Source: Ylistrum balloti (Eukaryota). From it: DNA of 64,000 nucleotides. Made by a program: the position numbers and the translations under genes. Below are positions 681 through 29,231 of this stretch, in pieces. The first letter of the stretch is position 1, and each line of letters starts with the position of its first letter. The stretch covers positions 992,001 to 1,056,000 of the forward strand of contig NW_026781970.1 of the NCBI RefSeq assembly GCF_031769215.1. Direction: 5' to 3'. The notes beneath the pieces were generated by a model. It was given only the letters and a program-made list of their open reading frames with translations. It was not told the DNA's origin and did no database searches.

Positions 681-1569
681 TTGGAAGTTTTGCAGCTGAT
701 GTGCAATGTCCTATTCGGTTTACCCTTACGCGGCAAGTTGGAAATATTTCGCTAGGTTCAAAGTTTATGGTCGGATCTGACCTGACCGCTTTCGCCTGAA
801 TTTAAATAGCTCACCCAGCTTAAAATTTGTCGTCCGATTAAAAAAAAAAATTGAAATGTTTTTTCGCATTTTTATCATTTAAAAAAAAAAAATCTGTTTG
901 TTAGTTTTATAATGTATTATAACGTTATCTATCTACTCGCATTACAAAGATGATAACACGAATACATTGATAATAAATCCAATAAAATGAGTAGTCACGG
1001 ATACAAGCTGTATAGTCACGATGAAGTTAATCGCCCATCCGACCTTAAATATTCTATTAGGTTAATAATTTCAGGCGAAAACCAAAACAACACCATTGAG
1101 ATTTTATCTCATAAACTTGTTTTGAATCATCTCCTTTATTAAGAAGTAACGAGAATTCGAATGATATTTCGTGCTATACAATTATATGCTACCTTGTCGA
1201 GTCGGGTTTTCCATGCATGACATACCGATGTGTATTTATATGGCATAATACGTGTCCTGAATACACATTGTATTTCTCATAGAACGATTATATTACTGCT
1301 TTTATATCACTCGTTACTGCAGGGTCAAGCTTGGACGATATCTCGGCCAACAGGCTTGTATTATTCGGAACTTTACCTAGGTTTCTTAGAAAATATGTAT
1401 AAGTGAATCATTTTTAATTGAAATATTTCATGAATTTAAAATAATGAGTTTCAAATCAGCACCTAATCAGACTGTAAGTGTTTTTGATACAACACTAAGA
1501 ACCAAGACTAGGTATGATCAAATGAAGATCCAAAGGTGGATTAAAATCCCTCTGAGACTTAACTCTAAC

Positions 1570-2460
1570 AATCCGCACTAGGTATCATCACACTGACACT
1601 ACACGCTCTAGGTTCGACCACACTTACACCCAACACTACATTTCATCACACTTACACCCCAAACTAGGTAGAGTCACACTTACACTCTACACTGTGTATG
1701 GTATCACACTGACACTCCACACTAGGTGGGATCACACTTACACTCTACACTGTGTATGGTATCACTCTGACACTCCACACTAAGTATAATCACACTGACA
1801 CCCCACACTAGGTAGGGTCACACTTACACTCTACACTGTGTATGGTATCACTCTGACACTCCACACTAAGTATAATCACACTGACACCCCACACTAGGTA
1901 GGGTCACACTTACACTCTACACTGTGTATGGTATCACCCTGACACCCCACACTAGGTAGGGTCACACTTACTCTCTACACTGTGTGTCGTATCACCCTGA
2001 CACTCCACATCTCGTATAATCACACTGACACCCCAAACTAGGTATGGTCACACTGACACTCCAACACTACGTATGATCATATTTAGACTCCACACTACGT
2101 ATGATCACACTGAGACTCCACACTACGTATGATCACACTGAGACTCCACACTTCGCATGATCACACCGACACTCGACACTACGTATGATCACACTGACAT
2201 TCCACACCTCGTATAATCACACTGAGACTCCACACTACGTATGATCACACTGACACACCAAACAAGGTATTATTACACTGACACTCTACACTACGTATGA
2301 TCACACTGAGACTCCACTCTACGTATAATCACACTGACACTCAACACTAGGTATAATCACACTGACACTCCACACTACGTATGATTACACTGAAACTCCA
2401 CACTACGTATGACCACACTGAGACTCCACTCTACGTATGGTCACACTGAGACCCGTACAC
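1570..2460. repeat. Minisatellite, about 28 bp unit (gatcacactgagactccacactacgtat), roughly 30 copies
   Basis: Period of 28 visible at 2103 and 2131; 86 bp higher-order unit at 1811 and 1897. Confidence 0.9.
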
Positions 2461-2890: not shown

Positions 2891-2992
2891 ATGGCTACCA
2901 ACACTGTGGACGATTTGTCTACTTTAGATCATTTTGACAACGATATTCTACTGCAAGTACTGGAGGAAAGGTACAACAAGGACAAAATATAT
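2891..2992 (+). CDS. Gene 1 exon 1 (MATNTVDDLSTLDHFDNDILLQVLEERYNKDKIY)
   Basis: Myosin N-terminal DDL..L...RY..D.IY pattern; in-frame TGA upstream at 2867; donor gtaagt at 2993. Confidence 0.9.
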
Positions 2993-5900: not shown

Positions 5901-8900
5901 CAGTGAAACTTTTTTTAAATATCAGAAATGTTATGGTTAGTTGATTAGATCTGCTGTTTCGAGTTGAATATATATGGCAATAATTTGAGATAACTTTTTG
6001 GGGAAACACTGCTGATTATAATATTTGATCTGATTGTATGATTTTCCTGGAAATGTTACACTGTATGTTTCCTTGATCACAAGATGAATTTACCATTAAG
6101 GAGTTTTACTACATAACCAGGTTAAAAAATAGTTTGATAGGTTAGTTAGAATTTATAATACACTATGTTGTCTGCAAACTAAAGGTAAGAGAAACATGCA
6201 TTGTGAAAACAGATATCTGTTTCTAATAGGCTCAGGGACAGAAAATGCATAGTTGGATTGCAAAATGATACTAATAAATGCTATTGAACATACGAAAAAA
6301 AAACATCACTGACGAGTCCTAAAAGGACGACGCCGCTAAATGGATGCAATTAAATTTAATATCTAGCTCAGTTAGTATCTAACTTTAAATTTGTTTTGAA
6401 AAGTGATACTCATTTATGTGTCTTTTTTACAATCTTCTTAAAGTACACGTAAACAAAATAACGTGGCATGGTTAAAGAGCAACTTTTTTGGACTTTGAAC
6501 ACTGATATTCATCACACAAGCACCTGCTTCGATTTTAAGTGTTATTGTCATGACTTTGGACTCTGATTTATTATTCATTTCATATCAAGTAAATACTGAG
6601 GTAAGGTTATACAGCACTGCTGAGTGGTTTAACACAGATGTACCTAATACACACCTGATTCAAGTGAAAATAAAATAAATTCCGTTTTATCTTTCAGACA
6701 TACGTAGGAGACATCCTGATTGCTGTCAACCCGTGTTCTCCCCTTTCGATATATGGCCCTCAGGTATGACGTCAACACAAATAGAGAAGTTATATAACTG
6801 GTACCCATATCATACCGATACAAAGTGTGATTGTTCATTTCATTTAATGTTAATTCTCTTCCTAATTCTTAAAACAAAAAGTGCGCGATGCATGCAAGTG
6901 CATATCTTTAAAGATAACGATTATCATAATTTTGAAAGACTAACAACGGGACGGGAATCCGGACCCGGAATACAATGTATTCTGTTTTTACGCCTACACG
7001 TCCCACATCCCCTTGAGTTTATGACTTACTCCTCCCACGTAACAAGTACACTGAGTGAGAGCGTGTGTAAGCGTGGTCGCCGATGGTCAAATATTGTAAA
7101 TGTTTGCGAAATAAACAAAAAATCTGAAATAAAATATTTTTTTCTAAATGTGATATCAAAGGATGATATTGAACTAAAATGACTGGGAATTATGATGCTA
7201 AGAAATGATACTAAGATAAGTCACCTTCCTAACTTTGTTGGTGTCCTGTCTTTGTGTGTTAATGCTAAAAACTGACACTTAGGTAGTTCACCTTCCTCAC
7301 TTTGTAAGTGTCTTTGCCCTGCATATTAATGTTAAATACTGACACTCAGGCAGGTCATCTCCCTCACTTTGTAAGTGTCTTTGCCCTGCGTATTAATGTT
7401 AGATACTGACACTTAGATAAGTCACCTCCCTTACGTTGTTTTTGTCTTGGCCCTGCGTATTTATGTTAAATACTAACACTCAGGCAGGTCACCTCCCTTA
7501 CGTTGTAAGTGTCTTTGCCCTGCATATTAATGTTAAATATTGACACTTAGGTAGTTCACCTTCCTCACTTTGTAAGTGTCTTTGCCCTGCATATTAATGT
7601 TAAATACTGACACTCAGGCAGGTTACCTCCCTTACGTTGTTTTTGTCTTGGCCCTGCGTGTTAATGTTAAATACTAACACTCAGGCAGGTTACCTCCCTT
7701 ACGCTGTTAGTGTCTTGGCCCTGCGTGTTAATGTTAAATACTAACACTTAGGTAGTTCACCTCCCTTACGTTGTTTTTGTCTTGGCCCTGCGTGTTAATG
7801 TTAAATACTGACACTTAGGCAGGTTACCTCCCTCACTTTGTAAGTGTCTTTGCCCTGCATATTAATGTTAAATATTGACACTTAGGTAGTTCACCTTCCT
7901 CACTTTGTAAGTGTCTTTGCCCTGCATATTAATGTTAAATACTGACACTCAGGCAGGTTACCTCCCTTACGTTGTTTTTGTCTTGGCCCTGCGTGTTAAT
8001 GTTAAATACTAACACTCAGGCAGGTTACCTCCCTTACGCTGTTAGTGTCTTGGCCCTGCGTGTTAATGTTAAATACTAACACTTAGGTAGTTCACCTCCC
8101 TTACGTTGTTTTTGTCTTGGCCCTGCGAGTTAATGTTAAATACTGACACTTACGCAGGTTACCTCCCTCACTTTGTAAGTGTCTTGGCACCTCCTTGTAA
8201 TGTTTAATACTGACACTTAGATAAGTCACCTCCATTACGTTGTTTTTGTCTTGGCCCTGCGTGTTAATGTTAAATACTAACACTCAGGCAGGTCACCTCC
8301 ATTACGTTGTTTTTGTCTTGGCCCTGCGTGTTAATGTTAAATACTAACACTCAGGCAGGTCACCTCCCTTACGTTGTTTTTGTCTTGGCCCTGCGTGTTA
8401 ATGTTAAATACTAACACTCAGGCAGTGTCTTGGCCCTGCGTATTAATGTTAAATACTGACACTCAGGCAGGTCACCTCCCTTACGCTGTTAGTGTCTTGG
8501 CCCTGCGTATTCATGTTAAATACTGACACTTAGGCAAGTCACCATCCTCACTGTGGTAGTGATCTGTCCCGGTGTATTAATTGTTAATATTGACATTTAG
8601 GTAAGTCACCTTCCTAGCATTATTAATGATCTGGCCTTGGTTGCTCAATGTCTAGTTAGAGATAATGAAAACGATCCTCCTCCTCTACATTGTAGGCCTA
8701 CATCAGTCACCAGTTAACAAAGTGAAGTTAATGCAATAAATAATATCACAAATAGTATGTTAAGATAGCTCAGATTAAAAACAAATTGATGTGCATTACG
8801 TCATACGCAGGAAAGACGGAAGTATCAGGATCTGAAAGTCCGAGGAAGTCAGCCTCCACATATCTATTGGGTGGCCGATAATGCACACAGGAGTCTGATA

Positions 8901-11900
8901 GAGACTCATCTAAAGCAATGTATAGTTGTTACTGGAGACTCCGGAGCTGGTAAAACCGAGACGACCAAGTACGCTCTACAACACCTTATAAAGCGTGTTG
9001 AAAAATGTGCCGTGCCCGACCTTGTGGAAAAACTCTCTCGGGTAGGCCGATATTGTATCCTAATGTGATGAATTATTTTCTTGAAGTATGAAACGCTCAC
9101 ACAAATCTGTCTGAAGTAGAACTTAATGTACGCAATTGAATATGAAAAAAAGAGCTATTTGCATGAAATGTAAACCAACTGATTTCGGTCGTTTTTAACG
9201 CATCAGTAATTGTGTTTTTCTGTGTGTAGTCTTTGTTTTGGTAAAAGGTGAATTTCTTCATAAATGTGAGCCTGTGATATGGCTTATGTTAGATAGTAAG
9301 AGATCTTATTTTTATGACGACAGGTCAATCCATTGATAGAACTATTTGGCAACGCATCTACTGTCTTTAATCCCAACTCTAGCAGGTTTGGCAAGCTAAT
9401 AGAGTTGTCGTACTTACCGGATGGTACTCTTGTTGGAGGTAAGTTACTGAATAGGGAAATGGAATTTGTATTTCAATTATTAGTGTACATTTTTTTCCGC
9501 ATATTTTGCGAGCTTATTCGATAAAAGAAAGTAGAGAAATGAAAACCCCTAATAATATAGCTATCACAGTAAGTATCTCTTAAAACATTTTGTAAACTTT
9601 TTATTGATGTTTAGAGTAAATGGCGAAAATTGTTTTAAAATGTCGGTCTGTGTAACACGGTATTTTAATGATATATTTCTGAATATCCATTATATTCACA
9701 GGTAAACTACAGACATTTGTGTTGGAAAAATCAAGGGTTGTCTGCCATGGTCTCGGGGACAAAAACTTTCACATTCTCCATGCACTTTTCGCAGGAATGG
9801 AGGAAAACAAGCTCCAATACTACTTCATTGAAGGAGCTGCATCCTATCGGTATGCATCATGCTATAGACAAAACTACAATATAACCTTTAAAGCATTGTC
9901 AGTGTCCAAATAATAACTTGTAAAAATGTATGAGATCTATGTTTTACCGACACACTGGTCTATTATTGACCTCGGGTAGGACAAAACCTGTCTGAGTTAG
10001 ATGTGTATTCCATGGTTTGATATGTACAGTATTTAAAGACAATGTTAAGTAACCACCTATCCCTCGCAGTAATCCAGATAACAAAATAAGACCAATAAGA
10101 TAGGATGAATGATCAGTTTAGATTTAAACATATTTTATTGCATATAAATATACATAAAGGATTGGGCAGAAGTTTTCCAACTTATACTAAGCCCGTTCCA
10201 AGTAATTAGTTTTTAATGATTAGTGAATTGTCATTTGTTGATTTGGACAGTTGGACGGCGAAGATTTACTAACAAATGAAGACTTTACCTAGGCTATTTA
10301 CATTATTTACCGAAATTAATAAACAAAAAGTAAACTGAAATAGATAATACGAATTGCAAATTAAGAGAGGTCAAGTAACGAAATAACAAAACGTAATTGT
10401 ACTCCAGTATAGACCATCTAAATATCATTATTAATGTCCTATGAATAAGATTTAGTATATAAATATTAGTATCACGATTCTATTTTTAATAATTAACGTC
10501 TTAACACTAGTATTGTCATACCATTAATAAGAATTAACTTTATAGTATCAGTTATACTGTAACAACAAAAACTACCAACATACAAATCTAACCATAATTC
10601 CAATTCCAGTTCAGTAATACTAGGGCTTAACATTAACAAAGATTTACATTGAGACTTCTGTACAAAGAGAATAAGACCAATAATCAACAGGCAAATTAAC
10701 GAGCATCAAAAACGTACAGCTTTAAATTACACGAAGGAATAGAATAGTTCTCAAGAAGATCAGTATTACGAACGCAAAACTTTCCCATAATTTTCATCAA
10801 CCTGCATCTTTTTAAACTCTTGGTAACGAATTTGTTTGCCCATTAACTTCTTAATATTAGTATTTCGTTATCCCGTCAATTAATGTCGGTATCTACATAT
10901 CAGAATAACCATCCCATTAAAAATTTACCAGTACAGTTACGATAATCCATATGCTTCGTTTTAGATAAGTAGAGTAACAATTATCGAAAGAAAAGGGACA
11001 TTAACTGTGGTATTTGTACATAGTATGTTTTGTATTACTACCTGTTATTTAACTGAGACTTCTCAACCTTCTGAAAGTAGAATGATCTACTACTTGCCAA
11101 ACTGGTGTATTAACTAGATTAATGTCGAGTAAATAAAAATTAAAGTGTCACATTTTTTGTGTCGTAATAAATAAAGCGGATAACCGGGTTCGTTTCGGGA
11201 CGTTCTTGTTGACCGAATTTCAATCTCCATTGATAAATATCATATGTATAATGTGATTCGCAAGCATTCCTTTACTGGTGATCAATAGAACAACAGATCT
11301 AACGAAATGTTTACAAACTGTTACTTTTAAGAATTCTTCAAGAGGCTGGCGCAGAACCACACAACTGTTCAGGGACATTTCGAGATGCAGAAGAAGAAAA
11401 AGAATTTGCTGACAAATTCCAAGAAGGGATGTTCATTCTCGCAGAACTTGGCTTCTCTGATCAGGTTAATGTTAAGAAATGCTCTTGTACGAGAACAGTT
11501 ACACGTTTTCTCATTTAATCCCCAAGTCTTGGTAATATCTGACAATTTCTCACCTATTGTTTATTTATACTTATATACTTCGCGTTTTACCAATACCTTG
11601 TTTGAACCAGAAAATAGTTTCTCTACTCTACCTTCGAGAAATCGAGCCCGATCATTCATGACTAAGTGAAGAAGCACATATTTCATAAATCATCTTTGTA
11701 ATACTGACAGCGAAAATTTTCATCCTCTGTTATGTAGGAAGTATATCACTTGATACAGATGCTAGCTACAGTCCTTCATATCGGCAACATTGAATTCCAA
11801 GAAGATGAGGGTACTGGAGGAGTGTCTATCGTGGACGAAGTCTACGTTTCAAACGGTAAATGATGTATCTTGACTAAGATATCATATTGATGAATGGCAT

Positions 11901-17900: not shown

Positions 17901-20900
17901 AATTTATGTTGAATTTGTCGACATAAGTAAGATTCAATTCTTATATTTCAATTCACGCTTCTTTTTTCTATAGCATGGAAACTGAGGCAGTTTATTTTCT
18001 ACTTTCATTTTCGTTTCTTGTCATCATATCGTCTGCCGTCATACAAGCAAATAGTCCGTCATTTGAAGACAGATTATTGTGAAGGTTGAAATATATTTCA
18101 GCGTGGTTACTTAATATTCAATGAAACTTAAATAAGAACAAAATTTGATATATATTTTCGACAACTTTAATGAAAATTTAAATAAAAGTGTGCAACAAAG
18201 ACAGTATGCATTTGCCCCACAGAGGAATAACGTCTAGACGTGGTGCGCCGGTTCGTAAACGAGCATTTTTTTACAGGCACCGAAGCAGAGAGCAAGAAAT
18301 ATCAGTCGCTTCACATTTTTCTAATTTTGAAACGTAAAGTTACAGTTATTAAATGTTGAATTAAATTTTAATTTTGATGTTTTTAAATCTCATACTTGTG
18401 GTATATTGCCAGTCTAGTAGAAGTTGGGGAGTTTTCTCCCCTTACCTAATATTTGTATTCATACGCAAAGACAATGTTAATCTGGTCAAATTCATTGGTA
18501 AATGAAGCAGATCACATTTAGTAGTTTCATTGATTCTGATTTTGGTAGAAATAGAAATATTTAGGATTGTTTTGCTTTTTTGTGTGATATGAAGGTGAAA
18601 GTGTGTGATGCTTTTTAGTTTCCTTGTTGTTTCATATGTAGTTTACATTATTCTCATTTTAGACATAACTTGCATCAATTGACCGATATTTACATGGCAG
18701 GTGTCGTCACTGAAGCATTTTAGTATTTTCTTCATTGTTGTTTGAAATATTTATGTTCAGCTTATATGCAAATTTTGCTTCATAAATCACATATGCAATT
18801 GATTCCAAGGTGCCTCTCCTGTGCTGAGCATAATTCTGGATCACCAAAATAGTAATTTACGAGGCGCCCTGTTGCACACATCAATGCCCATGACAAGTGC
18901 AATGAATGCAATGAACAATTATTTAGAACTATTTTCTGCAATGTTATTAGTTAAAGATGGGCAGTTGATGACAAAAGGGAGGCAATCCATTTATGAATGT
19001 TGAAATGTATATATATCTGAATCGTACAAAAACATATATATGATATATGTGTGTAAAACACTACAGTTAAGTAGTTATATCACAGTATCTCGCTCTTTCG
19101 AATTCATTATTCTCGGCAAACAAAGGTTACATTTATTGCCAAAATTATAGAAAGATGAACATATAAATGAATATGCCCTCGTGAGATATAAAATGATTAA
19201 AATATTTTTAAAATGTTTATAATGGTATGGAAACCTGGTATTAATTACAGCTGTATACAACATGAAGTTGATTAAATAACCTAAAATAGATGTTAGAATG
19301 AAAAAAATACTTTTAATAAATGAATATATTGCCGTGAAATCACAGTTATATTATTTGGGTATCGGTTATTGTGAAAAAATCATCATATTTCTGATATTAA
19401 GTAGTTAAAGCAATTTAATGACATTTGTTATCATTGCAGAAATCATTGAAATGCTTAATTGACAGAATATCGACGGCCAAACCAAATTTCATCAGGTAAG
19501 ACTAGTTATTTGAATTACATATGCAACGCAAGAATTTTTGATACTTAAGAATAATGTAATGTAGCATAAAGCACCCAATTATTTCTCCTAAATCAATTCA
19601 CACTTTTTTTTTTATACATTTCAATGAACCATGATTAACGTTTATGAAACTGTTTCAAGTATGTAATAAACCTTAACTAGAAATAGTTAAAAGTATCTTC
19701 ATGAATTAAATCAATAAAAATTCAAATTGTATTTAATGCATTTTTTAAAGATGTATAAAGCCCAATTTTGAACTAACATCTGGAAAGTTTGATCGACGTC
19801 TGGTGACCGACCAACTTACTAGTAGTGGCCTGTTGGAAGTTGCAAAAATCCGGAGAGATGGATATCCAATCAGAATGAAGATAGACGTTTTCCGAAAAAG
19901 GTTCGCATTGTTCAAAGTCGTTATATGAAACAAGAAATTTTCAGAACGAAAAAGTTTTTTCCCTATTATTCATGTACTTCGTGCTGATACGAAATGGTAT
20001 GAAATTGATTCTTCTTTGATGCTGCAGGTATCACGTGATTGAAGAAGAAATGCACTTGGTGGACAATGACGACAGAAAGATAGCCGAGGTCATCGCGCAG
20101 CACTGTGGGGTCAAGGATTACAAAATAGGGAAGTCCAAGGTATGTTTTAAAGGGGTATTAAGTAGCTATTTCAAAATCATTCAATGGTTTGTGATAAGTA
20201 AAGTCATGTTCTCAGTGCTGAACATGGCGATATAATTATACACGTACTCGGCTATGCCCAGCGTACTCCCCGTGTACTCCGGTTATTTTCTCCCAAACTA
20301 AGATCTCTCGCGCGGTTCCATCCGAGACTACAAGAATGATTTATGTAAGTTGAAAAGAAGCATCGCAATTGTTGTAAAATAAATAAAGTTAATTATTATT
20401 ATAACGTTCCTTTCGATAATATTGATAGACATAATACACGACCTATTATACCATATGCTGTGTTTTTCATTGCAGATTAAGGTTTGGTGGTCCTTATTGT
20501 TTTCAAAGTATCAAAAGATTTGAAATTCCTCTGTTTTCAGCCTACTTATTATTCAGACAAGTTAAATCTTTATACGTTGAAATGACAGAAAATTCCTTTG
20601 TACTAAATTTAAATCCTTTGTTTCATACTTTCAGATATTCCTGAAACAAGACGGTATTGATAACATAGAAAAGAAAGTAGCGTCCATGGTATGCATAGTC
20701 TATTTATTGTACATACGGTTTAAGCGAAGAAGAAATATCTTAAAACATGAAATAAATCTTATATCTGATCTGAATTTGGCATATCTTATTATCTCTTGCT
20801 TTTAAAACAATTGTTATAATTAGCTCCAGGAAAAGAAAGAACGACAAAAGAAAGAGGAAAGAAAAAAAAGGCAAAGACAATCATCAAATCAGCATCACGA

Positions 20901-23900
20901 GGACAGTTTCGATAATATTAGTGAGGCTGGTTCTGTCAGTTCTGGATATTCAACACCCTCGAACGGCCAGGTTTCAGTTGAAAAGCCACCATCATATTCT
21001 GCTCTCTCAGACATAGAGGCAGATCAAAAGAAAACTGATTCAAATAGTGTGTCATCGAAGAAAGCTTCGTATAACCCTTCAGAAATTGAAGAACAACTTC
21101 CGTAAGTTTTGTTTTTTTCATCACTTCATAACTTTAATACTTTAAAGTGTTTCCGTTTATGTATATAAAAATGGTAAAGACCGCGTTGGTGTTTATATTA
21201 AGAATGTTTTTTTATTTAATCTCAAGCAACGAATAAAACCCTTGAGAGGGTTTGCTTAACCTGTTGAATGTTTCATTCCTTCAGGGCCTACGATGTTTTC
21301 CGTATTACCGAACGAGATGTGGACGAATCGAACGAATTTGAGGAACGAGCGTTGAAAATTATGAGACTTTCTACATGTGTTATGTTGTTTCTTGGAATTC
21401 TTGGTACAGGGACAGCAAGTTTATTGGGCGTTTTGATGACGACTTCCGGCATCAGATTGGTAAGAACATTTGAACAGAAATTAACATTGATTCATCAAGA
21501 TCAAATACCTTGGCGTTGTTATATTTTAAAAATTGTATGTTAAGATATCACACTCAGTTTGCTAGGTGTATTGTGTAAAATATATATTTTATCTAATTTT
21601 CTACATCATAAAATCAATATCTATCACAGGACCACACTCACAAGGACCAATTGATTACAGAGATTCTAGTATGCTACAGTATACCACAGGGTATCACCTG
21701 CCTTGTCTCCTCATTAAAAATTCTCTTCGGTCGAAAGGAATGGCCAAAACTACAATACCTTTTCTTCGTAAGTAAATGAACATGAGGGATTTTTTCCAAA
21801 GTGTCCTATTTATGTAAAATGGACAAATAAAAAAGTACCCAGGATTTCAACATTTAACAATATGTTTTTGAATATAAATTTGAATACCGATATATCAATA
21901 TAGATCCTGTAGCGTATACCCACGATGTTGTGCTACCTAAAGTGAAACAAATAACTCTCTTAATGTATTAAAAAAAATTTTTTTAATAAGAAAAATTATA
22001 ACTAATAATGATTTGTTAAGGTATTCAATATAGCTATGAAAAATACTTTTCGTTTCAGGCGTTACTGCTTAATGCAGCGCAGGCGTGTGGTACTGGATTT
22101 CTTGTGTACCGAATTTTGCCAGAGTATGACACCGTATCTGGAATAACATTGACACTAGCCATTGCCCAGCTACCAACAATACTTAATATTCATCGCCAAA
22201 TTTTCAGACGCCGTAAAAGAAAACTGAAGTTCTTCAAGAGGCTATTTGTAGCCACTTTCTCTATTCTAGCAAGTCTTATACAATTTGGGTTTAACCCAAT
22301 GGTGTATATAACCGAAACATTTGTGCCGAAAGATTCTACTTCCAAAAATGAGGTCTTTCTAACAGTGTCACTTTTTCTTGTTTCCTTCGGCTGGTGTGAA
22401 GCATTTGCTGGAGAGGATATTGACATTGGTTTCATGACCATACCGTTTAAGAAATGGAGGCACGAGATATCTCAGTGTCGAGATAAGACAAACTTTGTAG
22501 CTTGCCCACTTAAAGTGGGTATATTTTTTCTATGTGCCTACCAGTTAGTTCCCGGCGTGACATTTGCTTTTCCTTTGCCAGTGACGTATAAGGATGTCAA
22601 TGTTTCAGTACCAAATAGCAATGAGACAACCATTGAACAAGTAGCTGTATACCAGTCCTTCTTTTCGACATATACACTAATGCTGATTCAAGTGATTTCT
22701 GGATACCTCTGCAGTTATCTGTGTGGAATAGCATGTAAGATCCACATGCAACGATTCTCGTTCTGTCTTGCGCTGTTTTTTGTTCCTATCCTCGCCATGA
22801 GTTTAACTATATGGAGGTGTATGGAAGGTCAAAATTCACTTCCGGTTTTGGAAGGGACAATTGCGTGTCCAGATGATTTGTCTGTTGACGGTTTAAAAGG
22901 AGTTCTTGGCGTTGCGCTGGCTTTGATGTTGTCCCTTGTGATGCTGACATTGCATGTTTGGTTCCCTTCAACAGAACGCATGGCAAAGTTGGAGAGGTAA
23001 GTGTTTGCGAACAATATTGCTCGTGCGACGTCAATACATTGATTTGATACATATGTATTTCATGTTTTATCATTACGTTTGCTTCGACAATACATTCTGA
23101 CTCATTATTTGTAGATTAGATATATTCTGTACTTACTCCTTTATCAAACAGTATGTAGTTTGTACTATTGCCAATGGCACAGGAACAGGCATTTTCATCA
23201 TTAAATACATGTATATATATAGGTTCATAAAGGTTCACTGAATTATGCAATAATGTCTTTTTTTTTAAATATACCTAAGGAAGACTAAGATGATGAATGT
23301 TGTACGTTTGCAACACCTTTTTTTCTCAGAGAAAACTTGGATATTCACACAAATTCATGATTAAATTCAATAAACACATTTGTATGAAGAAGATCTAAGG
23401 ATAATTTCAATGTTTATAAATGCGAATCTGAATATACAGAGTGTTAATGAGTCGTATCTCAAAGAAAATCGAAATTATCTTACATCATTTTTTCAAAAGG
23501 AAATTCGTTTGAGATGATTTGATTTCAATTATCACAACCAATAGATGAATGCATTTTTAAGTAACACTTATCGTCAGTTATATAAAAACGGCTTAAATTT
23601 GAGATAATAAAATCTGAGTGTACTAAGCGCGAAACAGTAAATATTTGAAAATTCCATGTATGGTACAATTTTAATTAGAATCGTGCAATTTTTATAGTGT
23701 TTCAATAACCAAATAGCTAATTTAACAACGAATACTTCATGAGGAGTTATAAACAGATATTTGGAAATGTACTGATAAGATCAACAGAGAATTTAGGAAT
23801 GCATTAAAATCGCACGCGTCTTTGTTTAGATGTTATATACTATATTAATGGTGAATGTAGTGACCGGATTTCTAATATCGTTAATTTCTCTGAATTGTTT

Positions 23901-26900
23901 TTACTACAGATTGTTTTGTCTGCCGATGTGGGATGGTTTTTTCACTGCCATAAATGTTCTCTTACGCCGAAAGGATGACTTAATGGAGACGGAGACTGGA
24001 CGCAAAAAATCTGGCTCTCGTGTGAAAGGAGAGAAAAAGACACGCCCAATGGTCAATATTTGTGCGACCATGTGGCATGAGACCAGACAGGAAATGCTAC
24101 AGCTCCTTAAATCTCTCTTCCGGTGAGATTTTTCATAATGTTCAAAAATTACTTCGAAATATACTAAATCTTATACAATAGTCGTGCAAAAAATACGTAA
24201 AGATTTACATTTATTTTACAGTTGGTTTAAAATGTGTGTGTCTCTCTCTAAACCTAACAGTATACATTGCTAAGTGTGATGACAGAGCTTTTGAGAATTA
24301 GAACGTCATCTAAATTTAATTCTATTCAAAGTTAACGGAATGTAAATTTTTAATGTGGCACGTATTAAAGAGTTATTTCCCTTTCAGTGGCTACACCTTT
24401 CACACAGAGGTGATGCAATTCACATTGCGAGCAGTAAATCATTCAATTATACTTTTTCACAGAAGCATTGCTCGAGATTTCTAAGCTAAGGTAGTTATTA
24501 CAACAAATGTATTTGTGTTATCAATAATTTAAACACTAAACTACATGATGTTTTCCGTTTTAGGTTGGATAGATACTATTCACAAAACGTGAATGCAGAA
24601 AAAGGCTTCGGTGTAGAACGGGACTATTTTGACATGCGGAGTAAGTCCAGATACACTTAACTCGCTAACTAGAGATTATTTCTCGTGGAGTAGTTATACT
24701 GTATAACAATTTATTTTTTACCAGTCATAGGAATGAGAAAATGATTCATTCATTTCAAAAAGGATGAGCGAAATGAAAAAAAGACAATCGATTTTTAAAG
24801 ACAGAAAATCATATGTACCGCTTTGCAGTTATATCTTAATTGATACATTTTGTATAATGGGAATATTCAAAGAAACAATGTTTATTTTTTTCAGAAACAT
24901 GATTTATTTGTGCGCGAACATTTTCCGATTTCATATTACCCAGGTACCAAAGTAATTACTAATTGAATCTGTATTATTGGTCCGAGAAACTAACAACTCA
25001 CCTTTATTGTGATTTATTGCAGTTCACGTGATATTTGATGATGCTTTTTACACTGATTCCAAAACCAAACAGCGTGTGCCAAATGAATATGTCCAGCAAC
25101 TTGTAGAATGTATAGACCAAGCATCGATGTAAGAATGGAACTGATGTTGTATATTAATGTCAAAAAGTGACATTCAATTTCGTTTCCATGAATGTTTTCA
25201 TCAGTAAATATCACTATATTACACATAAACCTGTGCGTTTAAATATGCCCAAAGATTCATATGAAAATTATCTTCTGAAGCACATGAATAGAATTGTTTG
25301 GTATTCAGACAAGAAATAACTACTAGGTCTATCTGAAGGATATACAATATTTTCTCGCACTGTCCAAGTTCATTGTGCAATCTTTATATCTTATTACGTG
25401 GAAACAAAAACAAATCGACCTCATATTTTAAAACTAGCTTCTTTCAACCCTGAAAGACCTCTTTTGGTTTTGCTATGTTTAATGCAATGTGCTCTTTATA
25501 GGTCTGTTGCGAAAGGCAGAATTATGTGGAATAATCATCCCAAGAAATTTACGACTCCTTACGGTGCCAGATTGGAGTGGACATTGCCAGGAGGCGTGCC
25601 AATGTACTTTCATCTAAAGGACAAATCTAAAGTTCGGCATCGAAAGAGGTGGTCACAAGTATGTATTAAAAATTTAACATAAAGGAAACTTGAACTACCG
25701 ATAAGTAATGGTTAGGAAAGTGATGCAGTTATTCAAAATATAATAAAATGTTATCGGTAGTAATTTTATTTGGAAAGTAATATCTATTCGAAGAGTATGT
25801 TATTGATATGATGACAATAACTTATTTTCTAATACACATGTTAAAATCTTTTAATTACAATGAATGGTTTCTGTAGGAATGAAATATATAAATAACTCAA
25901 TACATATAAGTAAGATTATCAAGCATACCTAAGAGAAACTTAAGGAAGTGTCTAGAGAAAGATGCGTCTGATAAAAATCGTGACCTTTTAAAGGTATATC
26001 AAAATGATAAATGCATTTTGTCAGATGTAGTAAGAAATACATCAATGATTTCAGAAAATAGAAATACTAAATCAAATGAGACGAGTAAGATCATTAACTT
26101 TGACAATATAGAAGAACTAATTCCAATTTCCTGCATATATTACAGATTCTCTACTTGTATTACTTACTTGGATTTGAATTGATGGGCGTAGGAAATGAAA
26201 ACGACATCTTGAATAAGAAAAGATCACGTCATCGAGTGAAGACCTTCACCTCCCTCCTAAATAAAATTCCAACCCACAAGATTAAAGAGGTGACAGATAT
26301 ATTATACTTTTCATTAAGGCACAATAAAAAACAAAATAATGTGATCTACAAATTTTGCAGCAAAGAAGCAATTTTTATAGTTGTCGGTTTTTGTTTCAAT
26401 TTTCTTCTTTGTTCTTTCTGAATGAATTTTTTTTTTCAAAATCTTTTAATTCCATCACTTATTACGAATAAATGTTTGTAATTAGACTCGGAACATATAT
26501 TGCACCAAAATCTAAGAATTTAAAAAAAAAAAAAACTTTTACGTGTAGTTTTTATACTTGAAGTATATATTACCTGTATCTATTTTAGGCCTACAACACG
26601 TACATTTTAACATTGGACGGTGATGTCGATTTCCGCCCGACCGCGGTCAAACTTCTTATTGACCGGATGCAGAAAAACGACAAAGTAGCTGCCGTTTGTG
26701 GAAGAATTCATCCGATAGGAAGCGGTGAGTGAACGTTATATTCTAGTTACTGCCATTTGAACTCAGTCTACAAATTCGAACCTTAACTGTATCTGACGGT
26801 GAAAATACCAACACTTTCGATTTCTGAAATATAAAATTGTAATGTATTATTTATAATAGTATGCCTGATCATCTATTGAAAGTAATCCCAAACTTAAGCT

Positions 26901-29231
26901 TCAGATAATATAGTTGCCTATAATTCAATATATTTGTTTTGGAAAATCAGGGCCAATGGTATGGTACCAGCAGTTTGAGTACGCCGTCGGTCATTGGCTA
27001 CAAAAGGCTGCGGAACACGTGTTCGGGTGTGTGTTGTGCTGTCCCGGATGTTTCAGTCTATTTCGTTTTGCCTCACTGATAGACGACAATGTTGTAAAAA
27101 TGTATACAACGCCACCATCTGAAGCAAGACACTATATCCAGTTTGAGCAAGGTAAAGGACAACATATCTTCCAAAAGACTTAAGTAAAACGTTAAGAAAA
27201 TCGATTAACAACACGGATCGTTTACATTTTACATTATTTTTTATGCCTAGTAAGCAATAAGTGAATAATATAAAAATAATCAATGACTGATGATATTGTA
27301 AATAACACAGCATATTCCATTTACCTGGTTTTATAGGTGAGGACAGATGGCTATGTACACTATTACTTCAACAAGGATGGAAGATTGACTACTGCGCGGG
27401 CGCAGATTCTTGGACATTTGCACCAGAGTCATTCAAAGAATTTTTCATCCAGCGACGACGCTGGGCTCCATCTACCATGGCAAATATACTGGATCTCTTG
27501 TCCTCATGGCAATCCACTGTCAAAATGAATGACAACATCAGTACACTGTACATTTTGTATCAGTTCGTATTAATGTCCTCCAGTATCCTGGGACCTGGCA
27601 CTGTTACGCTGATGATTGCGGGATCTTATTCATCAGTTTTTAATATCAATATGTACTATGCGTTATTGTTGTCGTTAGTACCGGTCATTGTTTTCATCGG
27701 AATATGTCTGAAAGGTAAAAATGATACCCAGATAATGATTGCTGGCTTATTGTCATCTATATATTCTGTCGTCATGGTAATAGTGACAGTTGGGATGGTA
27801 CTCAATATGGCTACGGAATCATTATTGAGTCCCAATGTCATCTTTATGATAGGTCTGGCCGTTATATTTTGTGTTGCTGGTATATCTCATCCAAAGGAGA
27901 TTATGTGTCTCGTACACGGAATTCTCTATTATTTGACTGTACCAAGTACCTTCATTTTCTTGACCATTTATTTCCTATGCAACCTAAATGTTGTATCTTG
28001 GGGTACTAGAGAGGGTCCAAAGAGGGTGGATCCAGAGGATGAGGAACGGAAGAGAAAAGAAGAAGAAGAAAAACAAAGAAAAAAGAAAAAAGGTGGAAAA
28101 ATATTCCGTGCTCTTGGTTTATCAACACTTTTTCACGAAGCCTTATCCTTGTTAAAACAAGCAATTGGTGGTATAAAGGAAGAAACAAACAATGCGCCGA
28201 AAACAGATCCAAAAGTGAATGTTGAAGCAGCTGCCGTGAAACAACAAAAAGAACGTCAACCTACTCTACCAATACCACAACCGAAGCCTGATGAACCTGA
28301 AACAGCAACTACCGTGAACAACAGAGGTGCATGGGGTGAGGTAGATTTCCTTGGAAATGAGAAAGTCCAAGATATTTCAAAAGATGAAGAGGAATTCTGG
28401 AAATATATAATTCAGAAATACCTGGAGCCAATTAATGAAGATAAAGACAAACAAATTCAGATTAAAGATGATCTGACAAGTCTAAGAAACAACGTAGTGT
28501 TTGGGTACTTCCTGATGAACCTTTTATTTATGATTGCAATTTTTCAGTTGCAACTCAATGAGGATCAACTGTCTCAGTTCTTTATCCTTGGAGAATACGA
28601 GCCTTTGTCATTGGCATTTTTAAGCGTATTTGCCATAGTCCTTGTAACACAGTTCATCGGTATGCTTCTTCATCGCTGGGGAACGTTTCTTCACCTTATG
28701 TCCAGCACGCGTATAGGACTATGCACACGGAATTATGAAGAAGAATATGCTGAAGTTGCCTTTAAGGAAGCTGGTCGGCTTCAAACTGGGGACCCAGAGC
28801 CAGATTATATAGAAGAACTTGATAGTGACACTGAGGGTGGATCTTCAGGTATCAACACCGTAAGACGATATGACGAAATCCAAGAAGAACAACCTGACTA
28901 TCCCGATGACGATAAATCAGTAATACTCCCTGCAACAACAGTACCACGAGAATGGGTCGGCAACATACCAAAACCAGATTACGGAGAGATGGATCCTGAT
29001 TATCCATCAAGTGAACACGAACCGAGCGGCCAAGCGCATCGATATAAAAATGCATATGAACGCAATTTTTCGAAGAGGTTTGAGACAATGCGAAACAAAT
29101 ACCAGAAACGTTACCAGCGTAGAATGAGTCAGGTTAATGGTCTTAACAACAATAACATAAGTAGGCGGGAGGCCTTGTACAATCGGTCTATAGAAATGAG
29201 AATGAAAAGGCGACAAAGTTTATTCACATAA
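2891..29231 (+). CDS. CHS: Gene 1: myosin motor domain-chitin synthase fusion, 30 coding exons, about 2209 aa (span includes introns)
   Basis: Thirty GT-AG exons join in consistent phase to 6630 nt with no internal stop. Myosin motifs: GDSGAGKT, NSSRFGK, LEKSRV, DALAK, DISGFE, HYAG, RCIKPN. Chitin synthase motifs: CATMWHET, KRWSQ, LDGD, GEDRW, QRRRW, SWGTRE. Confidence 0.95.
6304..6330 (+). ncRNA. Second, broken hammerhead-like core in gene 1 intron 1
   Basis: catca-CTGACGA-gtcc(taaaa)ggac-GA; GAAA is disrupted; same family as the 636-680 copy. Confidence 0.35.
6698..6763 (+). CDS. Gene 1 exon 2 (TYVGDILIAVNPCSPLSIYGPQ)
   Basis: Myosin TY.G.IL.AVNP motif; ttcag acceptor, gtatga donor. Confidence 0.92.
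7205..8620. repeat. Minisatellite, about 67 bp unit, roughly 21 copies, in gene 1 intron 2
   Basis: ctgacact recurs at 7272 and 7339; two or three interleaved sequence variants. Confidence 0.92.
8811..9041 (+). CDS. Gene 1 exon 3 (PPHIYWVAD, P-loop GDSGAGKTE)
   Basis: P-loop motif; 231 nt, phase 0-0; overlaps track ORF 8871-9068. Confidence 0.93.
9324..9438 (+). CDS. Gene 1 exon 4 (switch I, VNPLIELFGNASTVFNPNSSRFGK)
   Basis: Switch I motif; cag/gtaagt splice sites. Confidence 0.93.
9702..9849 (+). CDS. Gene 1 exon 5 (LEKSRVV...NFHILHALFAG)
   Basis: LEKSRV motif; phase 1-2. Confidence 0.92.
10099..10669 (-). mobile_element. Probable 5'-truncated LINE 3' fragment in gene 1 intron 5
   Basis: Minus strand ends ...ataagttggaaaacttctgcccaatcc...gcaataaaatatgtttaaatctaaa, which resembles LINE 3' ends as I recall them. 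Flanked by the 14 bp direct repeat aataagaccaataa (10085-10098 and 10670-10683). Confidence 0.4.
11332..11464 (+). CDS. Gene 1 exon 6 (ILQEAG...LGFSDQ)
   Basis: Phase 2-0 fit; homologous to gene 2 exon 6 (ends GFSDE). Confidence 0.85.
11738..11855 (+). CDS. Gene 1 exon 7 (LATVLHIGNIEF)
   Basis: Myosin LH.GNI.F motif; phase 0-1. Confidence 0.9.
12043..12123 (+). CDS. Gene 1 exon 8 (MELLGL...ALISRPRVVMG)
   Basis: LLG...L..AL pattern; phase 1-1. Confidence 0.87.
12658..12799 (+). CDS. Gene 1 exon 9 (GEQIV...RDALAKELYSSLF)
   Basis: DALAK motif; phase 1-2. Confidence 0.93.
12990..13075 (+). mobile_element. Possible SINE 3' tail remnant
   Basis: gaaatgaccctgcttgttcacgggtgac resembles mollusc SINE tails from memory; not verified. 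Confidence 0.25.
13193..13418 (+). CDS. Gene 1 exon 10 (switch II DISGFE, relay NSFEQLLINMTNE)
   Basis: Switch II and relay motifs; 226 nt, same length as gene 2 exon 9. Confidence 0.94.
13765..13920 (+). CDS. Gene 1 exon 11 (PGVLSILEEE...FGIVHYAGE)
   Basis: G.LS.L.EE and HYAG motifs; phase 0-0. Confidence 0.92.
14130..14450 (+). mobile_element. tRNA-derived SINE remnant in gene 1 intron 11
   Basis: A-box-like gggtcggtcgagc followed by B-box gggttcgaatc at about 14182; cloverleaf not intact; 3' limit uncertain. Confidence 0.45.
15592..15725 (+). CDS. Gene 1 exon 12 (VKYSAEGFLEKN)
   Basis: V.Y...GFLEKN motif; phase 0-2. Confidence 0.92.
16103..16168 (+). CDS. Gene 1 exon 13 (loop 2, SGRGSLRGSFRSRLEGQKIRG)
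   Basis: tgcag acceptor, gtatga donor, open frame, phase 2-2; no family motif, so supported by splice sites and phase only. Confidence 0.72.
16870..16951 (+). CDS. Gene 1 exon 14 (loop 2 end, ...SVASQYK)
   Basis: Matches the myosin TV.SQFK-type motif; phase 2-0. Confidence 0.85.
17270..17710. repeat. Degenerate GC-rich tandem repeat, about 32 bp unit (gtctggcacgagtaggacggcctaatcgc)
   Basis: Recurring ggcacgagt/ggacggcct motifs in gene 1 intron 14. Confidence 0.65.
19440..19495 (+). CDS. Gene 1 exon 15 (KSLKCLIDRISTAKPNFIR)
   Basis: SL..L...P.FIR motif; phase 0-2. Confidence 0.9.
19751..19900 (+). CDS. Gene 1 exon 16 (CIKPN...QLTSSGLLEVAKIRRDGYPIR)
   Basis: RCIKPN and GYPIR motifs; phase 2-2. 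Confidence 0.93.
20028..20139 (+). CDS. Gene 1 exon 17 (converter, YKIGKSK)
   Basis: Converter Y.IG.SK motif; phase 2-0. Confidence 0.9.
20635..20688 (+). CDS. Gene 1 exon 18 (IFLKQDGIDNIEKKVASM)
   Basis: Completes GKSKIFLK; phase 0-0. Confidence 0.88.
20824..21101 (+). CDS. Gene 1 exon 19 (charged helix plus Ser-rich linker)
   Basis: Open frame of 278 nt with gtaagt donor; the acceptor could alternatively be 20830 (same frame). Confidence 0.82.
21285..21459 (+). CDS. Gene 1 exon 20 (AYDVFR and first transmembrane segment of the CHS module)
   Basis: YDVFR resembles the WDVFR motif at the N-terminus of animal chitin synthases; followed by a hydrophobic helix. Confidence 0.88.
21630..21767 (+). 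CDS. Gene 1 exon 21 (transmembrane, LFGRKEWP)
   Basis: Phase 0-0, hydrophobic, gtaagt donor. Confidence 0.85.
22059..22996 (+). CDS. Gene 1 exon 22 (multi-pass N-terminal membrane domain, ends HVWFPSTERMAKLER)
   Basis: In frame with track ORF 22104-23000; several hydrophobic helices; gtaagt donor. Confidence 0.93.
23910..24122 (+). CDS. Gene 1 exon 23 (LFCLPMWDG...CATMWHET)
   Basis: CATMWHET motif of animal chitin synthases. Confidence 0.95.
24564..24640 (+). CDS. Gene 1 exon 24 (LDRYYSQ...DYFDMR)
   Basis: Phase 2-1 fit; gtaagt donor. Confidence 0.87.
25023..25128 (+). CDS. Gene 1 exon 25 (HVIFDDAF...PNEYVQQLVECIDQAS)
   Basis: H..FDDAF motif; phase 1-2. Confidence 0.92.
25502..25658 (+). 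CDS. Gene 1 exon 26 (TPYGARLEWTLPGG...HLKDKSKVRHRKRWSQ)
   Basis: Conserved TPYG.RL and KRWSQ motifs. Confidence 0.95.
26146..26289 (+). CDS. Gene 1 exon 27 (ILYLYYLLGFELMG)
   Basis: Y.YYLLG motif following KRWSQ; phase 0-0. Confidence 0.9.
26589..26724 (+). CDS. Gene 1 exon 28 (TYILTLDGDVDF...VCGRIHPIGSG)
   Basis: DGD metal/nucleotide-sugar motif and CGRIHP. Confidence 0.95.
26951..27151 (+). CDS. Gene 1 exon 29 (YQQFEYAVGHWLQKAAEH...CCPGCFSLFR...QFEQ)
   Basis: Highly conserved CHS catalytic block. Confidence 0.96.
27337..29231 (+). CDS. Gene 1 exon 30 (GEDRW, QRRRW, C-terminal TM domain, SWGTRE, acidic tail, stop)
   Basis: EDR and QRRRW catalytic motifs are in frame with track ORF 27477-29231. 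Confidence 0.96.

What the first reader, a model, noticed from the sequence alone, without database searches (positions are those of the whole stretch)
2891..29231. Complete, apparently intact myosin motor-chitin synthase fusion gene
Seen: a 30-exon frame of 2209 aa joins a full myosin head to a chitin synthase with all catalytic motifs. Established: myosin-CHS fusions are known from bivalves and other lophotrochozoans (for example Atrina and Mytilus shell-associated CHS) and arose independently in fungi (class V/VII CHS). The architecture is therefore not new, but this divergent paralog may be unannotated or split by gene predictors, since most of its exons are missing from the ORF track.
Basis: partly seen in the sequence, partly recalled or inferred. 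Interest (0 to 1): 0.7.

Follow-up and report, generated by a model that had tools for sequence, protein, structure and literature searches.

The report
Scallop myosin–chitin synthase gene, intact
This is a real, intact scallop gene that fuses a myosin motor to a chitin synthase. It belongs to a well-described molluscan family and is already annotated in the public genome, so it is ordinary apart from one small conserved exon that the public model leaves out.

Summary
On the + strand, 30 GT-AG exons (2891-29231) splice into a 6630-nt reading frame of 2209 aa with no internal stop. It joins a complete myosin head to a chitin synthase that has all its catalytic motifs.

The window is Ylistrum balloti DNA, identical to JAUZWB010000564.1. 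RefSeq calls it as one gene, LOC132544183 ("uncharacterized protein"), with the same start and stop.

The RefSeq protein (2163 aa) equals my model except that it lacks exon 21 (21630-21767, 46 aa). That exon encodes a transmembrane helix conserved in all animal type II chitin synthases and is under purifying selection. The omission is probably an annotation slip.

All 30 exons recur one-to-one in Pecten and Mizuhopecten, with dN/dS about 0.07 in both halves.

In the tree the gene falls in a mollusc-wide lineage that is sister to the classic shell enzyme Ar-CS1. The Ar-CS1 orthologue is the next gene downstream, an order also seen in Mizuhopecten and Lottia.

No RNA data were available, so expression as a single mRNA is inferred, not shown. 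Family, fusion and tandem layout are all published.

The parts
2891..2992 (+). Exon 1 (aa 1-34): start codon and the N-terminus of the myosin head
   Evidence: ATG at 2891 with an in-frame stop 8 codons upstream. The same MA(T/S)NTVDDLSTLD start is found in the Pecten orthologue. Donor GTAAGT.
6698..6763 (+). Exon 2 (aa 35-56), myosin head
   Evidence: 100% identical peptide in Pecten and Mizuhopecten.
8811..9041 (+). Exon 3 (aa 57-133), myosin head with P-loop GDSGAGKT at aa 98
   Evidence: Pfam Myosin_head E = 2e-16 on this piece. Motif. Junctions.
9324..9438 (+). Exon 4 (aa 134-171), myosin switch I NPNSSRFGK at aa 149
   Evidence: Pfam Myosin_head E = 7.5e-11..
9702..9849 (+). Exon 5 (aa 172-220), myosin head
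11332..11464 (+). Exon 6 (aa 221-265), myosin head
11738..11855 (+). Exon 7 (aa 266-304), myosin head
12043..12123 (+). Exon 8 (aa 305-331), myosin head
12658..12799 (+). Exon 9 (aa 332-378), myosin head
13193..13418 (+). Exon 10 (aa 379-454), myosin switch II DISGFE at aa 390
   Evidence: Pfam Myosin_head E = 3.6e-21..
13765..13920 (+). Exon 11 (aa 455-506), myosin head
15592..15725 (+). Exon 12 (aa 507-550), myosin head
16103..16168 (+). Exon 13 (aa 551-572), myosin head (loop region)
16870..16951 (+). Exon 14 (aa 573-600), myosin head
19440..19495 (+). Exon 15 (aa 601-618), myosin head
   Evidence: 100% identical peptide in both other scallops.
19751..19900 (+). Exon 16 (aa 619-668), myosin head C-terminal part
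   Evidence: Pfam Myosin_head E = 1.1e-12, profile positions 582-635..
20028..20139 (+). Exon 17 (aa 669-706), end of the myosin head
   Evidence: The Pfam match ends at aa 710.
20635..20688 (+). Exon 18 (aa 707-724), end of the motor and start of the linker
20824..21101 (+). Exon 19 (aa 725-816): charged, Ser-rich linker between motor and membrane domain. No IQ motif was found.
   Evidence: No Pfam family. dN/dS 0.17-0.23, the least constrained part of the gene.
21285..21459 (+). Exon 20 (aa 817-875): first transmembrane helix of the synthase half. The exon 19-to-20 junction splits a codon (phase 2).
   Evidence: AF2 helix at local residues 24-65 of P0001:812-1835.
21630..21767 (+). Exon 21 (aa 876-921, 138 nt, phase 0/0): second transmembrane helix and the start of the third. 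Missing from the RefSeq protein LOC132544183.
   Evidence: the only difference between my model and P0157; the segment, including the LFG...WPS motif, is conserved in animal type II chitin synthases including insects; dN/dS 0.04-0.10; helix at local residues 67-98, pLDDT 84-91; present in six transcript-derived relatives.
22059..22996 (+). Exon 22 (aa 922-1233): the remaining N-terminal transmembrane helices (about TM3-TM10)
   Evidence: Pfam ChitinSynthase_IV_N E = 2.2e-6. Hydropathy. AF2 helices.
23910..24122 (+). Exon 23 (aa 1234-1304): start of the cytosolic GT2 catalytic domain, CATMWHE at aa 1285
24564..24640 (+). Exon 24 (aa 1305-1330), catalytic domain
25023..25128 (+). Exon 25 (aa 1331-1365), catalytic domain
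25502..25658 (+). Exon 26 (aa 1366-1418), catalytic domain
26146..26289 (+). Exon 27 (aa 1419-1466), catalytic domain
26589..26724 (+). Exon 28 (aa 1467-1511), catalytic domain with LDGD at aa 1475
   Evidence: Pfam Glycos_transf_2..
26951..27151 (+). Exon 29 (aa 1512-1578), catalytic domain with QQFEY at aa 1518 and CPGCF at aa 1542
   Evidence: Pfam Chitin_synth_2 E = 1.4e-9..
27337..29231 (+). Exon 30 (aa 1579-2209 plus stop TAA at 29229-29231): GEDR, QRRRW, a five-helix membrane cluster, SWGTRE, a Lys/Glu-rich loop (E22-like), two more helices and an acidic C-terminal tail
   Evidence: Pfam Chitin_synth_2 E = 5e-14.. AATAAA lies 156 nt downstream, at 29387.

Best explanation
The region is a functional single-copy gene of the scallop Ylistrum balloti, RefSeq LOC132544183. 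It encodes a 2209-aa membrane enzyme.

Domain order, from the N-terminus:
- a cytosolic myosin motor (aa 1-710);
- a charged linker (about 710-830);
- about ten transmembrane helices;
- a cytosolic GT2 chitin synthase core (about 1235-1650);
- a five-helix translocation cluster ending in SWGTRE;
- a Lys/Glu-rich outward-facing loop;
- two more helices and an acidic tail.

By homology with Ar-CS1 and solved chitin synthases, it should polymerise UDP-GlcNAc into chitin and extrude the chain through its own membrane channel. The myosin head should tie the enzyme to cortical actin, so that the position of chitin deposition is coupled to the cytoskeleton.

The gene is the scallop member of a mollusc-wide lineage that is sister to the Ar-CS1 lineage, inside Zakrzewski's lophotrochozoan group A. 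It sits directly upstream of the Ar-CS1-type gene, an arrangement older than the bivalve-gastropod split.

Shown here: gene structure, intactness, domains, motifs, fold, orthology, selection and synteny. Inferred: transcription as one mRNA, enzymatic and motor activity, and the tissue where it acts.
For: - Gene model: 30 GT-AG exons, 2209 aa, no internal stop.
- Identity: equal to RefSeq P0157 except for exon 21. The locus DNA is identical to the window and is called as one gene over exactly 2891-29231.
- Domains: Myosin_head E = 4.4e-167 at full profile length, Chitin_synth_2 E = 2.1e-31.
- Motifs: all motor and synthase motifs present. The protein departs from the majority residue at only 13 of the 291 columns that are at least 90% conserved in 54 relatives, and at 1 of the 60 in the motor.
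- Solved relatives: myosin motors at E down to 3.6e-119; chitin synthases ScChs1, CaChs2 and PsChs1.
- Fold: the AF2 model of the orthologous synthase half (pLDDT 74, pTM 0.73) has solved chitin synthases as its top 20 Foldseek hits, E from 2e-15 to 1e-11.
- Conservation: all 30 exons recur one-to-one in Pecten and Mizuhopecten. dN/dS is 0.065-0.075 overall, 0.06-0.07 in the motor and 0.02-0.04 in the catalytic core.
- Phylogeny: 100% SH-aLRT for the scallop clade, for its mollusc-wide lineage, and for that lineage's sister relation to the Ar-CS1 clade.
- Synteny: the same head-to-tail order with the Ar-CS1-type gene holds in the window, in Mizuhopecten and in Lottia.
- Transcripts in relatives: a 7027-nt intronless Logan contig from a member of the same lineage carries motor and synthase in one 2096-aa frame.
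- Literature: Zakrzewski et al. 2014 (PMC3942024); Ar-CS1 architecture in bioRxiv 10.64898/2026.08.31.748318.
Against: - No RNA evidence exists for this species or for any scallop orthologue. The one public run that holds the locus behaves as DNA: its contigs run through introns and show no splice joints.
- No transcript-derived protein fragments of scallop orthologues turned up.
- dS is about 1.2, near saturation, so the dN/dS figures are rough.
- The RefSeq model omits exon 21, so at least one pipeline did not support that exon.
- Two conserved residues of the GWWENF motif are changed to GWCEAF in the scallop clade; the consequence is unknown.
- Tissue and role are not addressed by any data here. 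Members of the same lineage persist in shell-less octopods, so a shell role cannot be assumed.
Confidence: 0.9

Rival explanations
1. The RefSeq 29-exon form, which skips exon 21 and gives 2163 aa, is the true or main product. Exon 21 would then be a rarely used cassette or a dead exon in this species.
For: The public annotation gives only this form. Exon 21 is 138 nt with phase 0/0, so skipping keeps the frame.
Against: Exon 21 is open and has consensus splice sites, acceptor ...TCACAG and donor GTAAGT. It is 85% identical in peptide to Pecten and Mizuhopecten, with dN/dS 0.04-0.10. It encodes a helix and the LFG...WPS motif found in all animal type II chitin synthases, including insects. It is modelled as a confident transmembrane helix. 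All six transcript-derived relatives contain it, whereas the models that lack it are genome predictions: Pinctada P0197, Mytilus coruscus P0188, Liolophura P0178 and Owenia P0199. Removing one membrane pass would put the motor and the catalytic domain on opposite sides of the membrane; this is an inference from roughly 10 helices counted.
Confidence: 0.08
2. Two neighbouring genes, a myosin and a chitin synthase, were wrongly joined by homology-guided modelling and are really expressed separately.
For: No RNA evidence from this species was available.
Against: Intron 19 is only 183 nt, and the exon 19-to-20 junction splits a codon with consensus GT-AG sites. The linker exon and both flanking junctions are conserved in three scallop genera and are under purifying selection. 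The synthase half has no upstream start of its own. The fused architecture is the rule across this clade and is seen in intronless transcript contigs of relatives. Ar-CS1 was cloned as a cDNA (Weiss et al. 2006, cited in PMC3942024).
Confidence: 0.02
3. The gene is a decaying or silent duplicate of the neighbouring Ar-CS1-type gene: an unprocessed pseudogene that happens still to be open.
For: It is much more diverged than the Ar-CS1 lineage, with long branches and about 42% identity to non-scallop relatives. No expression data are available.
Against: A 6630-nt frame across 30 exons without a stop. dN/dS is about 0.07 against two genera at dS about 1.2. 278 of 291 highly conserved columns are kept. 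Orthologues are retained in bivalves, gastropods and cephalopods since before those classes split.
Confidence: 0.02

Closest known systems
Ar-CS1 of Atrina rigida (Weiss et al. 2006) and its bivalve orthologues, the classic shell-associated myosin chitin synthase
   Same: Same architecture from end to end: N-terminal myosin motor, N-terminal helix bundle, GT2 core with QRRRW, five-helix cluster, SWGTRE, a Lys/Glu-rich loop (E22-like), two C-terminal helices and an acidic tail. Same superclade of motor-linked lophotrochozoan synthases.
   Different: It is not the orthologue. Identity is 41%, and the gene sits in the sister lineage. The true Ar-CS1-type gene of this scallop starts about 21 kb downstream, at 50078. 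The residue before QRRRW is I where Ar-CS1 has the 'NQRRRW' form. GWWENF is GWCEAF. Nothing is known about where this paralogue acts.
Scallop orthologues: Pecten maximus LOC117333891, Argopecten irradians 'chs-2-like' (P0155), Mizuhopecten yessoensis LOC110445657
   Same: 84-86% identity over the full length with only one or two single-residue gaps. The same 30 exons recur in Pecten and Mizuhopecten. The same downstream neighbour is found in Mizuhopecten.
   Different: Only species divergence. These models include the exon-21 segment, which the Ylistrum RefSeq model lacks.
Lottia gigantea tandem chitin synthases on scaffold KB202883.1 (LOTGIDRAFT_235019, _127716, _127517). I take these to be the tandem CS2-4 that Zakrzewski et al. 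2014 place in group A.
   Same: LOTGIDRAFT_235019 falls in the window gene's lineage. It lies about 8 kb upstream of _127716 (Ar-CS1 lineage) on the same strand, the same order as in the scallops.
   Different: About 39-41% identity. The equation with 'CS2-4' rests on adjacency and on the paper's text, because its supplementary ID table was not available.
Fungal class V/VII chitin synthases with a myosin motor domain
   Same: Analogous architecture: a motor followed by a chitin synthase.
   Different: Independent fusion. According to Zakrzewski et al. 2014 (PMC3942024), the motor comes from a different myosin group and the synthase from a different clade. Not tested here.

Membership tests
Lophotrochozoan myosin-motor chitin synthases (metazoan type II, motor-linked groups A-C) | Complete N-terminal myosin motor domain with P-loop, switch I and switch II | tested here: met
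   Pfam Myosin_head E = 4.4e-167 over profile positions 1-679 of 679. GDSGAGKT, NPNSSRFGK and DISGFE present. Solved myosin motors match at E down to 3.6e-119.
Lophotrochozoan myosin-motor chitin synthases (metazoan type II, motor-linked groups A-C) | GT2 chitin synthase core with donor, acceptor and product-binding motifs (DGD, QxFEY, EDR, QRRRW) and the SWGTRE motif | tested here: met
   Chitin_synth_2 E = 2.1e-31. All motifs located. Chitin synthase fold on the orthologue's model, with solved chitin synthases as the top 20 Foldseek hits.
Lophotrochozoan myosin-motor chitin synthases (metazoan type II, motor-linked groups A-C) | Motor and synthase in one reading frame of one gene | tested here: met
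   A single 2209-aa frame over 30 GT-AG exons. The public annotation calls one gene with the same ends. The structure is conserved in two other genera.
Lophotrochozoan myosin-motor chitin synthases (metazoan type II, motor-linked groups A-C) | Motor and synthase on one mRNA in this species | tested here: inconclusive
   No RNA run holds the locus, and the only holder is DNA-like. Only indirect support: an intronless transcript contig of a relative in the same lineage.
Lophotrochozoan myosin-motor chitin synthases (metazoan type II, motor-linked groups A-C) | Phylogenetic placement among motor-linked lophotrochozoan synthases | tested here: met
   ML tree of 58 proteins over 1995 columns: the gene nests in a mollusc-wide clade (100) that is sister (100) to the Ar-CS1 clade. 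Support values are SH-aLRT from a quick search, so no bootstrap was run.
Lophotrochozoan myosin-motor chitin synthases (metazoan type II, motor-linked groups A-C) | Motor domain derived from the myosin III/XVI group | not tested
   Taken from Zakrzewski et al. 2014. The preprint read states that no myosin III structure has been solved. No myosin class tree was built.
Lophotrochozoan myosin-motor chitin synthases (metazoan type II, motor-linked groups A-C) | Chitin synthase activity and actin-dependent ATPase activity | not testable with these tools
   Needs recombinant protein or a tissue assay.
Ar-CS1 orthologue group (classic bivalve shell chitin synthase) | Orthology: nests inside the clade holding Atrina Ar-CS1 | tested here: not met
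   It falls in the sister clade. The Ar-CS1-type orthologue is the neighbouring gene at 50078 onwards, whose best match is Mizuhopecten LOC110445656, followed by a Mytilus californianus homologue (P0176) and Atrina Ar-CS1.

The most novel reading that the evidence does not exclude
This fast-evolving sister lineage of Ar-CS1 has been kept beside Ar-CS1 in the same head-to-tail order since before bivalves and gastropods split, and it is retained even in shell-less octopods. It may therefore have a specialised role distinct from adult shell formation, for example larval shell, periostracum, ligament or a non-mineralised chitinous structure. The changed GWWENF motif and the residue before QRRRW might reflect an altered product or altered regulation.
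Probability: 0.3. Interest if true: 0.35.

Novelty: already known. Interest (0 to 1): 0.15.

Why it matters
Myosin-chitin synthases are thought to couple the cytoskeleton to the organic scaffold of mollusc shells. Knowing which paralogue is which matters for biomineralisation work in farmed scallops.

Here the gene, its family and its tandem layout are all already on record. The practical yield is therefore small:
- A corrected gene model. The public protein lacks a conserved 46-aa transmembrane exon, and the same exon is dropped in several other molluscan gene predictions.
- A clear statement that this gene is the sister paralogue of Ar-CS1, not its orthologue, so it should not be assumed to be the shell enzyme.

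Tried and rejected
- RNA evidence. Laying it on 19400-25300 showed contigs running through introns and no joints, so it is DNA. A coverage hole at 20.6-25.1 kb is uninformative by the tool's own note.
- Transcript fragments across the motor-synthase junction. A search with an alignment of four scallop segments found nothing at E <= 1e-30, probably because low-complexity linker words swamped the candidates.
- Spliced fragments of the catalytic half. The only near hit was P0343 (78% identity, 649 aa on a 3-kb contig). It covers just the part encoded by the single large exon 30, so it says nothing about splicing.
- Tree building. treekit's automatic alignment timed out, so I aligned with a faster MAFFT mode.
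- Exact CDS of the orthologues. My first attempt failed on small exons. I replaced it with exon-by-exon codon pairing, which leaves out split codons.
- Lottia naming. The supplementary ID table of Zakrzewski et al. was not held, so the Lottia CS numbers are inferred from adjacency.
- Alternative or duplicated exons inside the gene: none found.
- Other genes between 29232 and 50077 or upstream of 2891: no homologue hits and only short ORFs.
- Rfam: no family at gathering score in the window.

Full report
**Observation**

The + strand between 2891 and 29231 carries many short stop-free stretches. Among them are a myosin P-loop, switch I and switch II, and the chitin synthase signatures LDGD, QQFEY, EDR and QRRRW.

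A search of the last large exon against 1.8 billion protein representatives returned a 2211-aa protein at 88% identity (P0001). tblastn of P0001 against the window gave 30 collinear matches covering residues 1-2211.

I resolved each junction by taking the in-frame GT..AG pair that best reproduced the orthologue. The result is 30 exons, all GT-AG, a 6630-nt CDS and 2209 aa, with one stop at 29229-29231.

**Whose gene it is, and whether it is annotated**

P0001 is Pecten maximus LOC117333891. A search with it found full-length orthologues in Argopecten irradians, Mizuhopecten yessoensis and Ylistrum balloti.

My model is 86%, 84% and 84% identical to the first three. It is identical to the Ylistrum protein (P0157, LOC132544183, 2163 aa) except for one 46-residue gap.

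The record that encodes P0157 is GCA_031769215.1, contig JAUZWB010000564.1. It holds one called gene whose range corresponds exactly to window 2891-29231, and its DNA is identical to the window wherever they overlap.

So the window is Y. balloti, and the gene is annotated as one fused gene, though only as an "uncharacterized protein".

**The one discrepancy: exon 21**

The gap in P0157 is aa 876-921, precisely exon 21 (21630-21767, 138 nt, phase 0/0). The evidence that this exon is real:

- It is open and has consensus splice sites.
- It is present at the same length in Pecten and Mizuhopecten, with 85% peptide identity and dN/dS 0.04-0.10.
- The segment, with its LFG...WPS motif, is conserved across animal type II chitin synthases, including the insect outgroups.
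- In an AlphaFold2 model of the orthologous synthase half (P0001:812-1835, 52-sequence alignment, pLDDT 74, pTM 0.73) it forms the second transmembrane helix at pLDDT 84-91, plus the start of the third.
- Six relatives derived from intronless transcript contigs all contain it. The models that lack it (Pinctada P0197, Mytilus coruscus P0188, Liolophura P0178, Owenia P0199) are genome predictions.

Hydropathy and the model both give about ten helices between the motor and the catalytic domain. Dropping one would leave an odd number and would place two cytosolic domains on opposite sides of the membrane. This last step is inference from a crude count.

A minor skipped isoform cannot be excluded without RNA.

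**What the protein is**

- Pfam on P0157 gives Myosin_head at E = 4.4e-167 over the full 679-position profile (aa 6-710) and Chitin_synth_2 at E = 2.1e-31, plus the N-terminal chitin synthase membrane domain.
- The motor matches solved myosin motors at E down to 3.6e-119.
- The synthase half matches solved yeast, Candida and Phytophthora chitin synthases by sequence.
- By fold, solved chitin synthases are the top 20 Foldseek hits, E from 2e-15 to 1e-11, followed by hyaluronan and cellulose synthases.
- After the five-helix cluster come SWGTRE, a Lys/Glu-rich loop, two helices and an acidic tail. This is the layout described for Ar-CS1, including its charged E22 region (bioRxiv 10.64898/2026.08.31.748318).
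- No IQ motif was found.
- Of 291 alignment columns at least 90% conserved in 54 relatives, the protein departs at 13, mostly conservatively, and at only 1 of the 60 in the motor. The notable departure is GWWENF changed to GWCEAF in all four scallops.

**Is it alive?**

No RNA data were to be had. The single public run that holds the locus is DNA-like. Two protein searches aimed at transcript fragments found nothing useful.

The case for function therefore rests on evolution. All 30 exons recur one-to-one in two other genera.

| Region | dN/dS (vs Pecten / vs Mizuhopecten) |
|---|---|
| Whole gene | 0.065 / 0.075 |
| Myosin motor | 0.074 / 0.059 |
| Catalytic exons | 0.018 / 0.041 |
| Linker exon 19 | 0.225 / 0.166 |

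These are Nei-Gojobori estimates at dS about 1.2, which is close to saturation, so they are rough.

The exon 19-to-20 junction splits a codon across a 183-nt intron and is conserved. That leaves no room for an independent synthase transcript start.

In a relative of the same lineage, a 7027-nt contig carries motor and synthase in a single uninterrupted 2096-aa frame, so it is a transcript.

**Which family member**

I built an ML tree of 58 full-length proteins over 1995 columns (LG+G4, quick search, SH-aLRT only).

- The four scallop sequences form a clade (100), sister to a Mytilus pair (100).
- Both sit inside a mollusc-wide clade (100) with Solemya, Potamilus, Haliotis, Lottia 235019, Littorina and Octopus/Argonauta "chs-1".
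- That clade is sister (100) to the clade holding Atrina Ar-CS1.

The window gene's lineage has much longer branches than the Ar-CS1 lineage.

**Neighbourhood**

- The second myosin head in the window (50078-62449 and beyond) matches Mizuhopecten LOC110445656 best, followed by a Mytilus californianus homologue (P0176) and Atrina Ar-CS1. It is therefore the Ar-CS1-type gene.
- In Mizuhopecten the two orthologues lie in the same head-to-tail order, about 24 kb apart.
- In Lottia the member of this lineage lies about 8 kb upstream of the Ar-CS1-lineage member on the same strand, with a third paralogue adjacent.
- This fits the tandem Lottia CS2-4 that Zakrzewski et al. 2014 assign to lophotrochozoan group A and to duplications in early molluscs (PMC3942024).
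- The same paper documents that the fusion to a myosin arose independently in fungi and lophotrochozoans.
I checked it independently here.

**Mechanism**

By homology, the enzyme should take UDP-GlcNAc at the cytosolic GT2 site. The DGD and QxFEY motifs bind the donor and metal, EDR provides the catalytic base, and QRRRW holds the product. The chain should be threaded through the channel formed by the helices after the catalytic domain.

The N-terminal motor should bind cortical actin, so the enzyme's position or activity follows the cytoskeleton, as proposed for Ar-CS1. None of this was measured for this paralogue.

Because the lineage persists in octopods, which lack a calcified shell, a shell-specific role should not be assumed.

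**Verdict**

This is a correct reading of a real gene, but both the gene and its kind are already known. The only additions are a corrected exon and the paralogue assignment. Interest is low.

Noticed in passing
window 21630-21767; also P0197, P0188, P0178, P0199: The same small transmembrane exon that is missing from the Ylistrum RefSeq protein is also missing from predicted proteins of Pinctada, Mytilus coruscus, Liolophura and Owenia. Transcript-derived relatives have it. This looks like a recurrent gene-prediction omission in this family.
   Followed up: partly
window 22389-22406 (aa 1032-1037, exon 22): The motif GWWENF, conserved in at least 94% of 54 relatives, reads GWCEAF in Ylistrum, Pecten and Argopecten and GWCESF in Mizuhopecten (W to C, N to A or S). 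The consequence is unknown.
   Followed up: no
window 50078-62449 and beyond: The first ten or so exons of a second myosin-chitin synthase gene on the same strand, about 21 kb downstream. It is the orthologue of Mizuhopecten LOC110445656, in the Ar-CS1 lineage. The same order is found in Mizuhopecten and Lottia.
   Followed up: partly
window 7206-8615 (intron 2): Minisatellite of about 18 copies of a 67-bp unit, with a higher-order period of 335 bp and 86% matches. It creates long spurious ORFs.
   Followed up: no
window 36484-38972: A 2.5-kb satellite array in the intergenic region, with 130-bp units in higher-order periods of 267 and 397 bp and 91-94% matches.
   Followed up: no
window 1568-2449: Tandem array of a 28-bp unit (about 31 copies, 76% matches), lying 0.4-1.3 kb upstream of the start codon.
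   Followed up: no
window about 20363-20403 (intron 17): A short stretch that many unrelated contigs of the DNA run end on or start from, with a summed depth of about 3300 against about 10 nearby. It is the edge of a high-copy repeat.
   Followed up: no
window 50980-52035 and 62412-63014: Two further minisatellites, with 50-bp and 61-bp units, inside the neighbouring gene. The second is the subject of another note of this scan (s1-254323).
   Followed up: no
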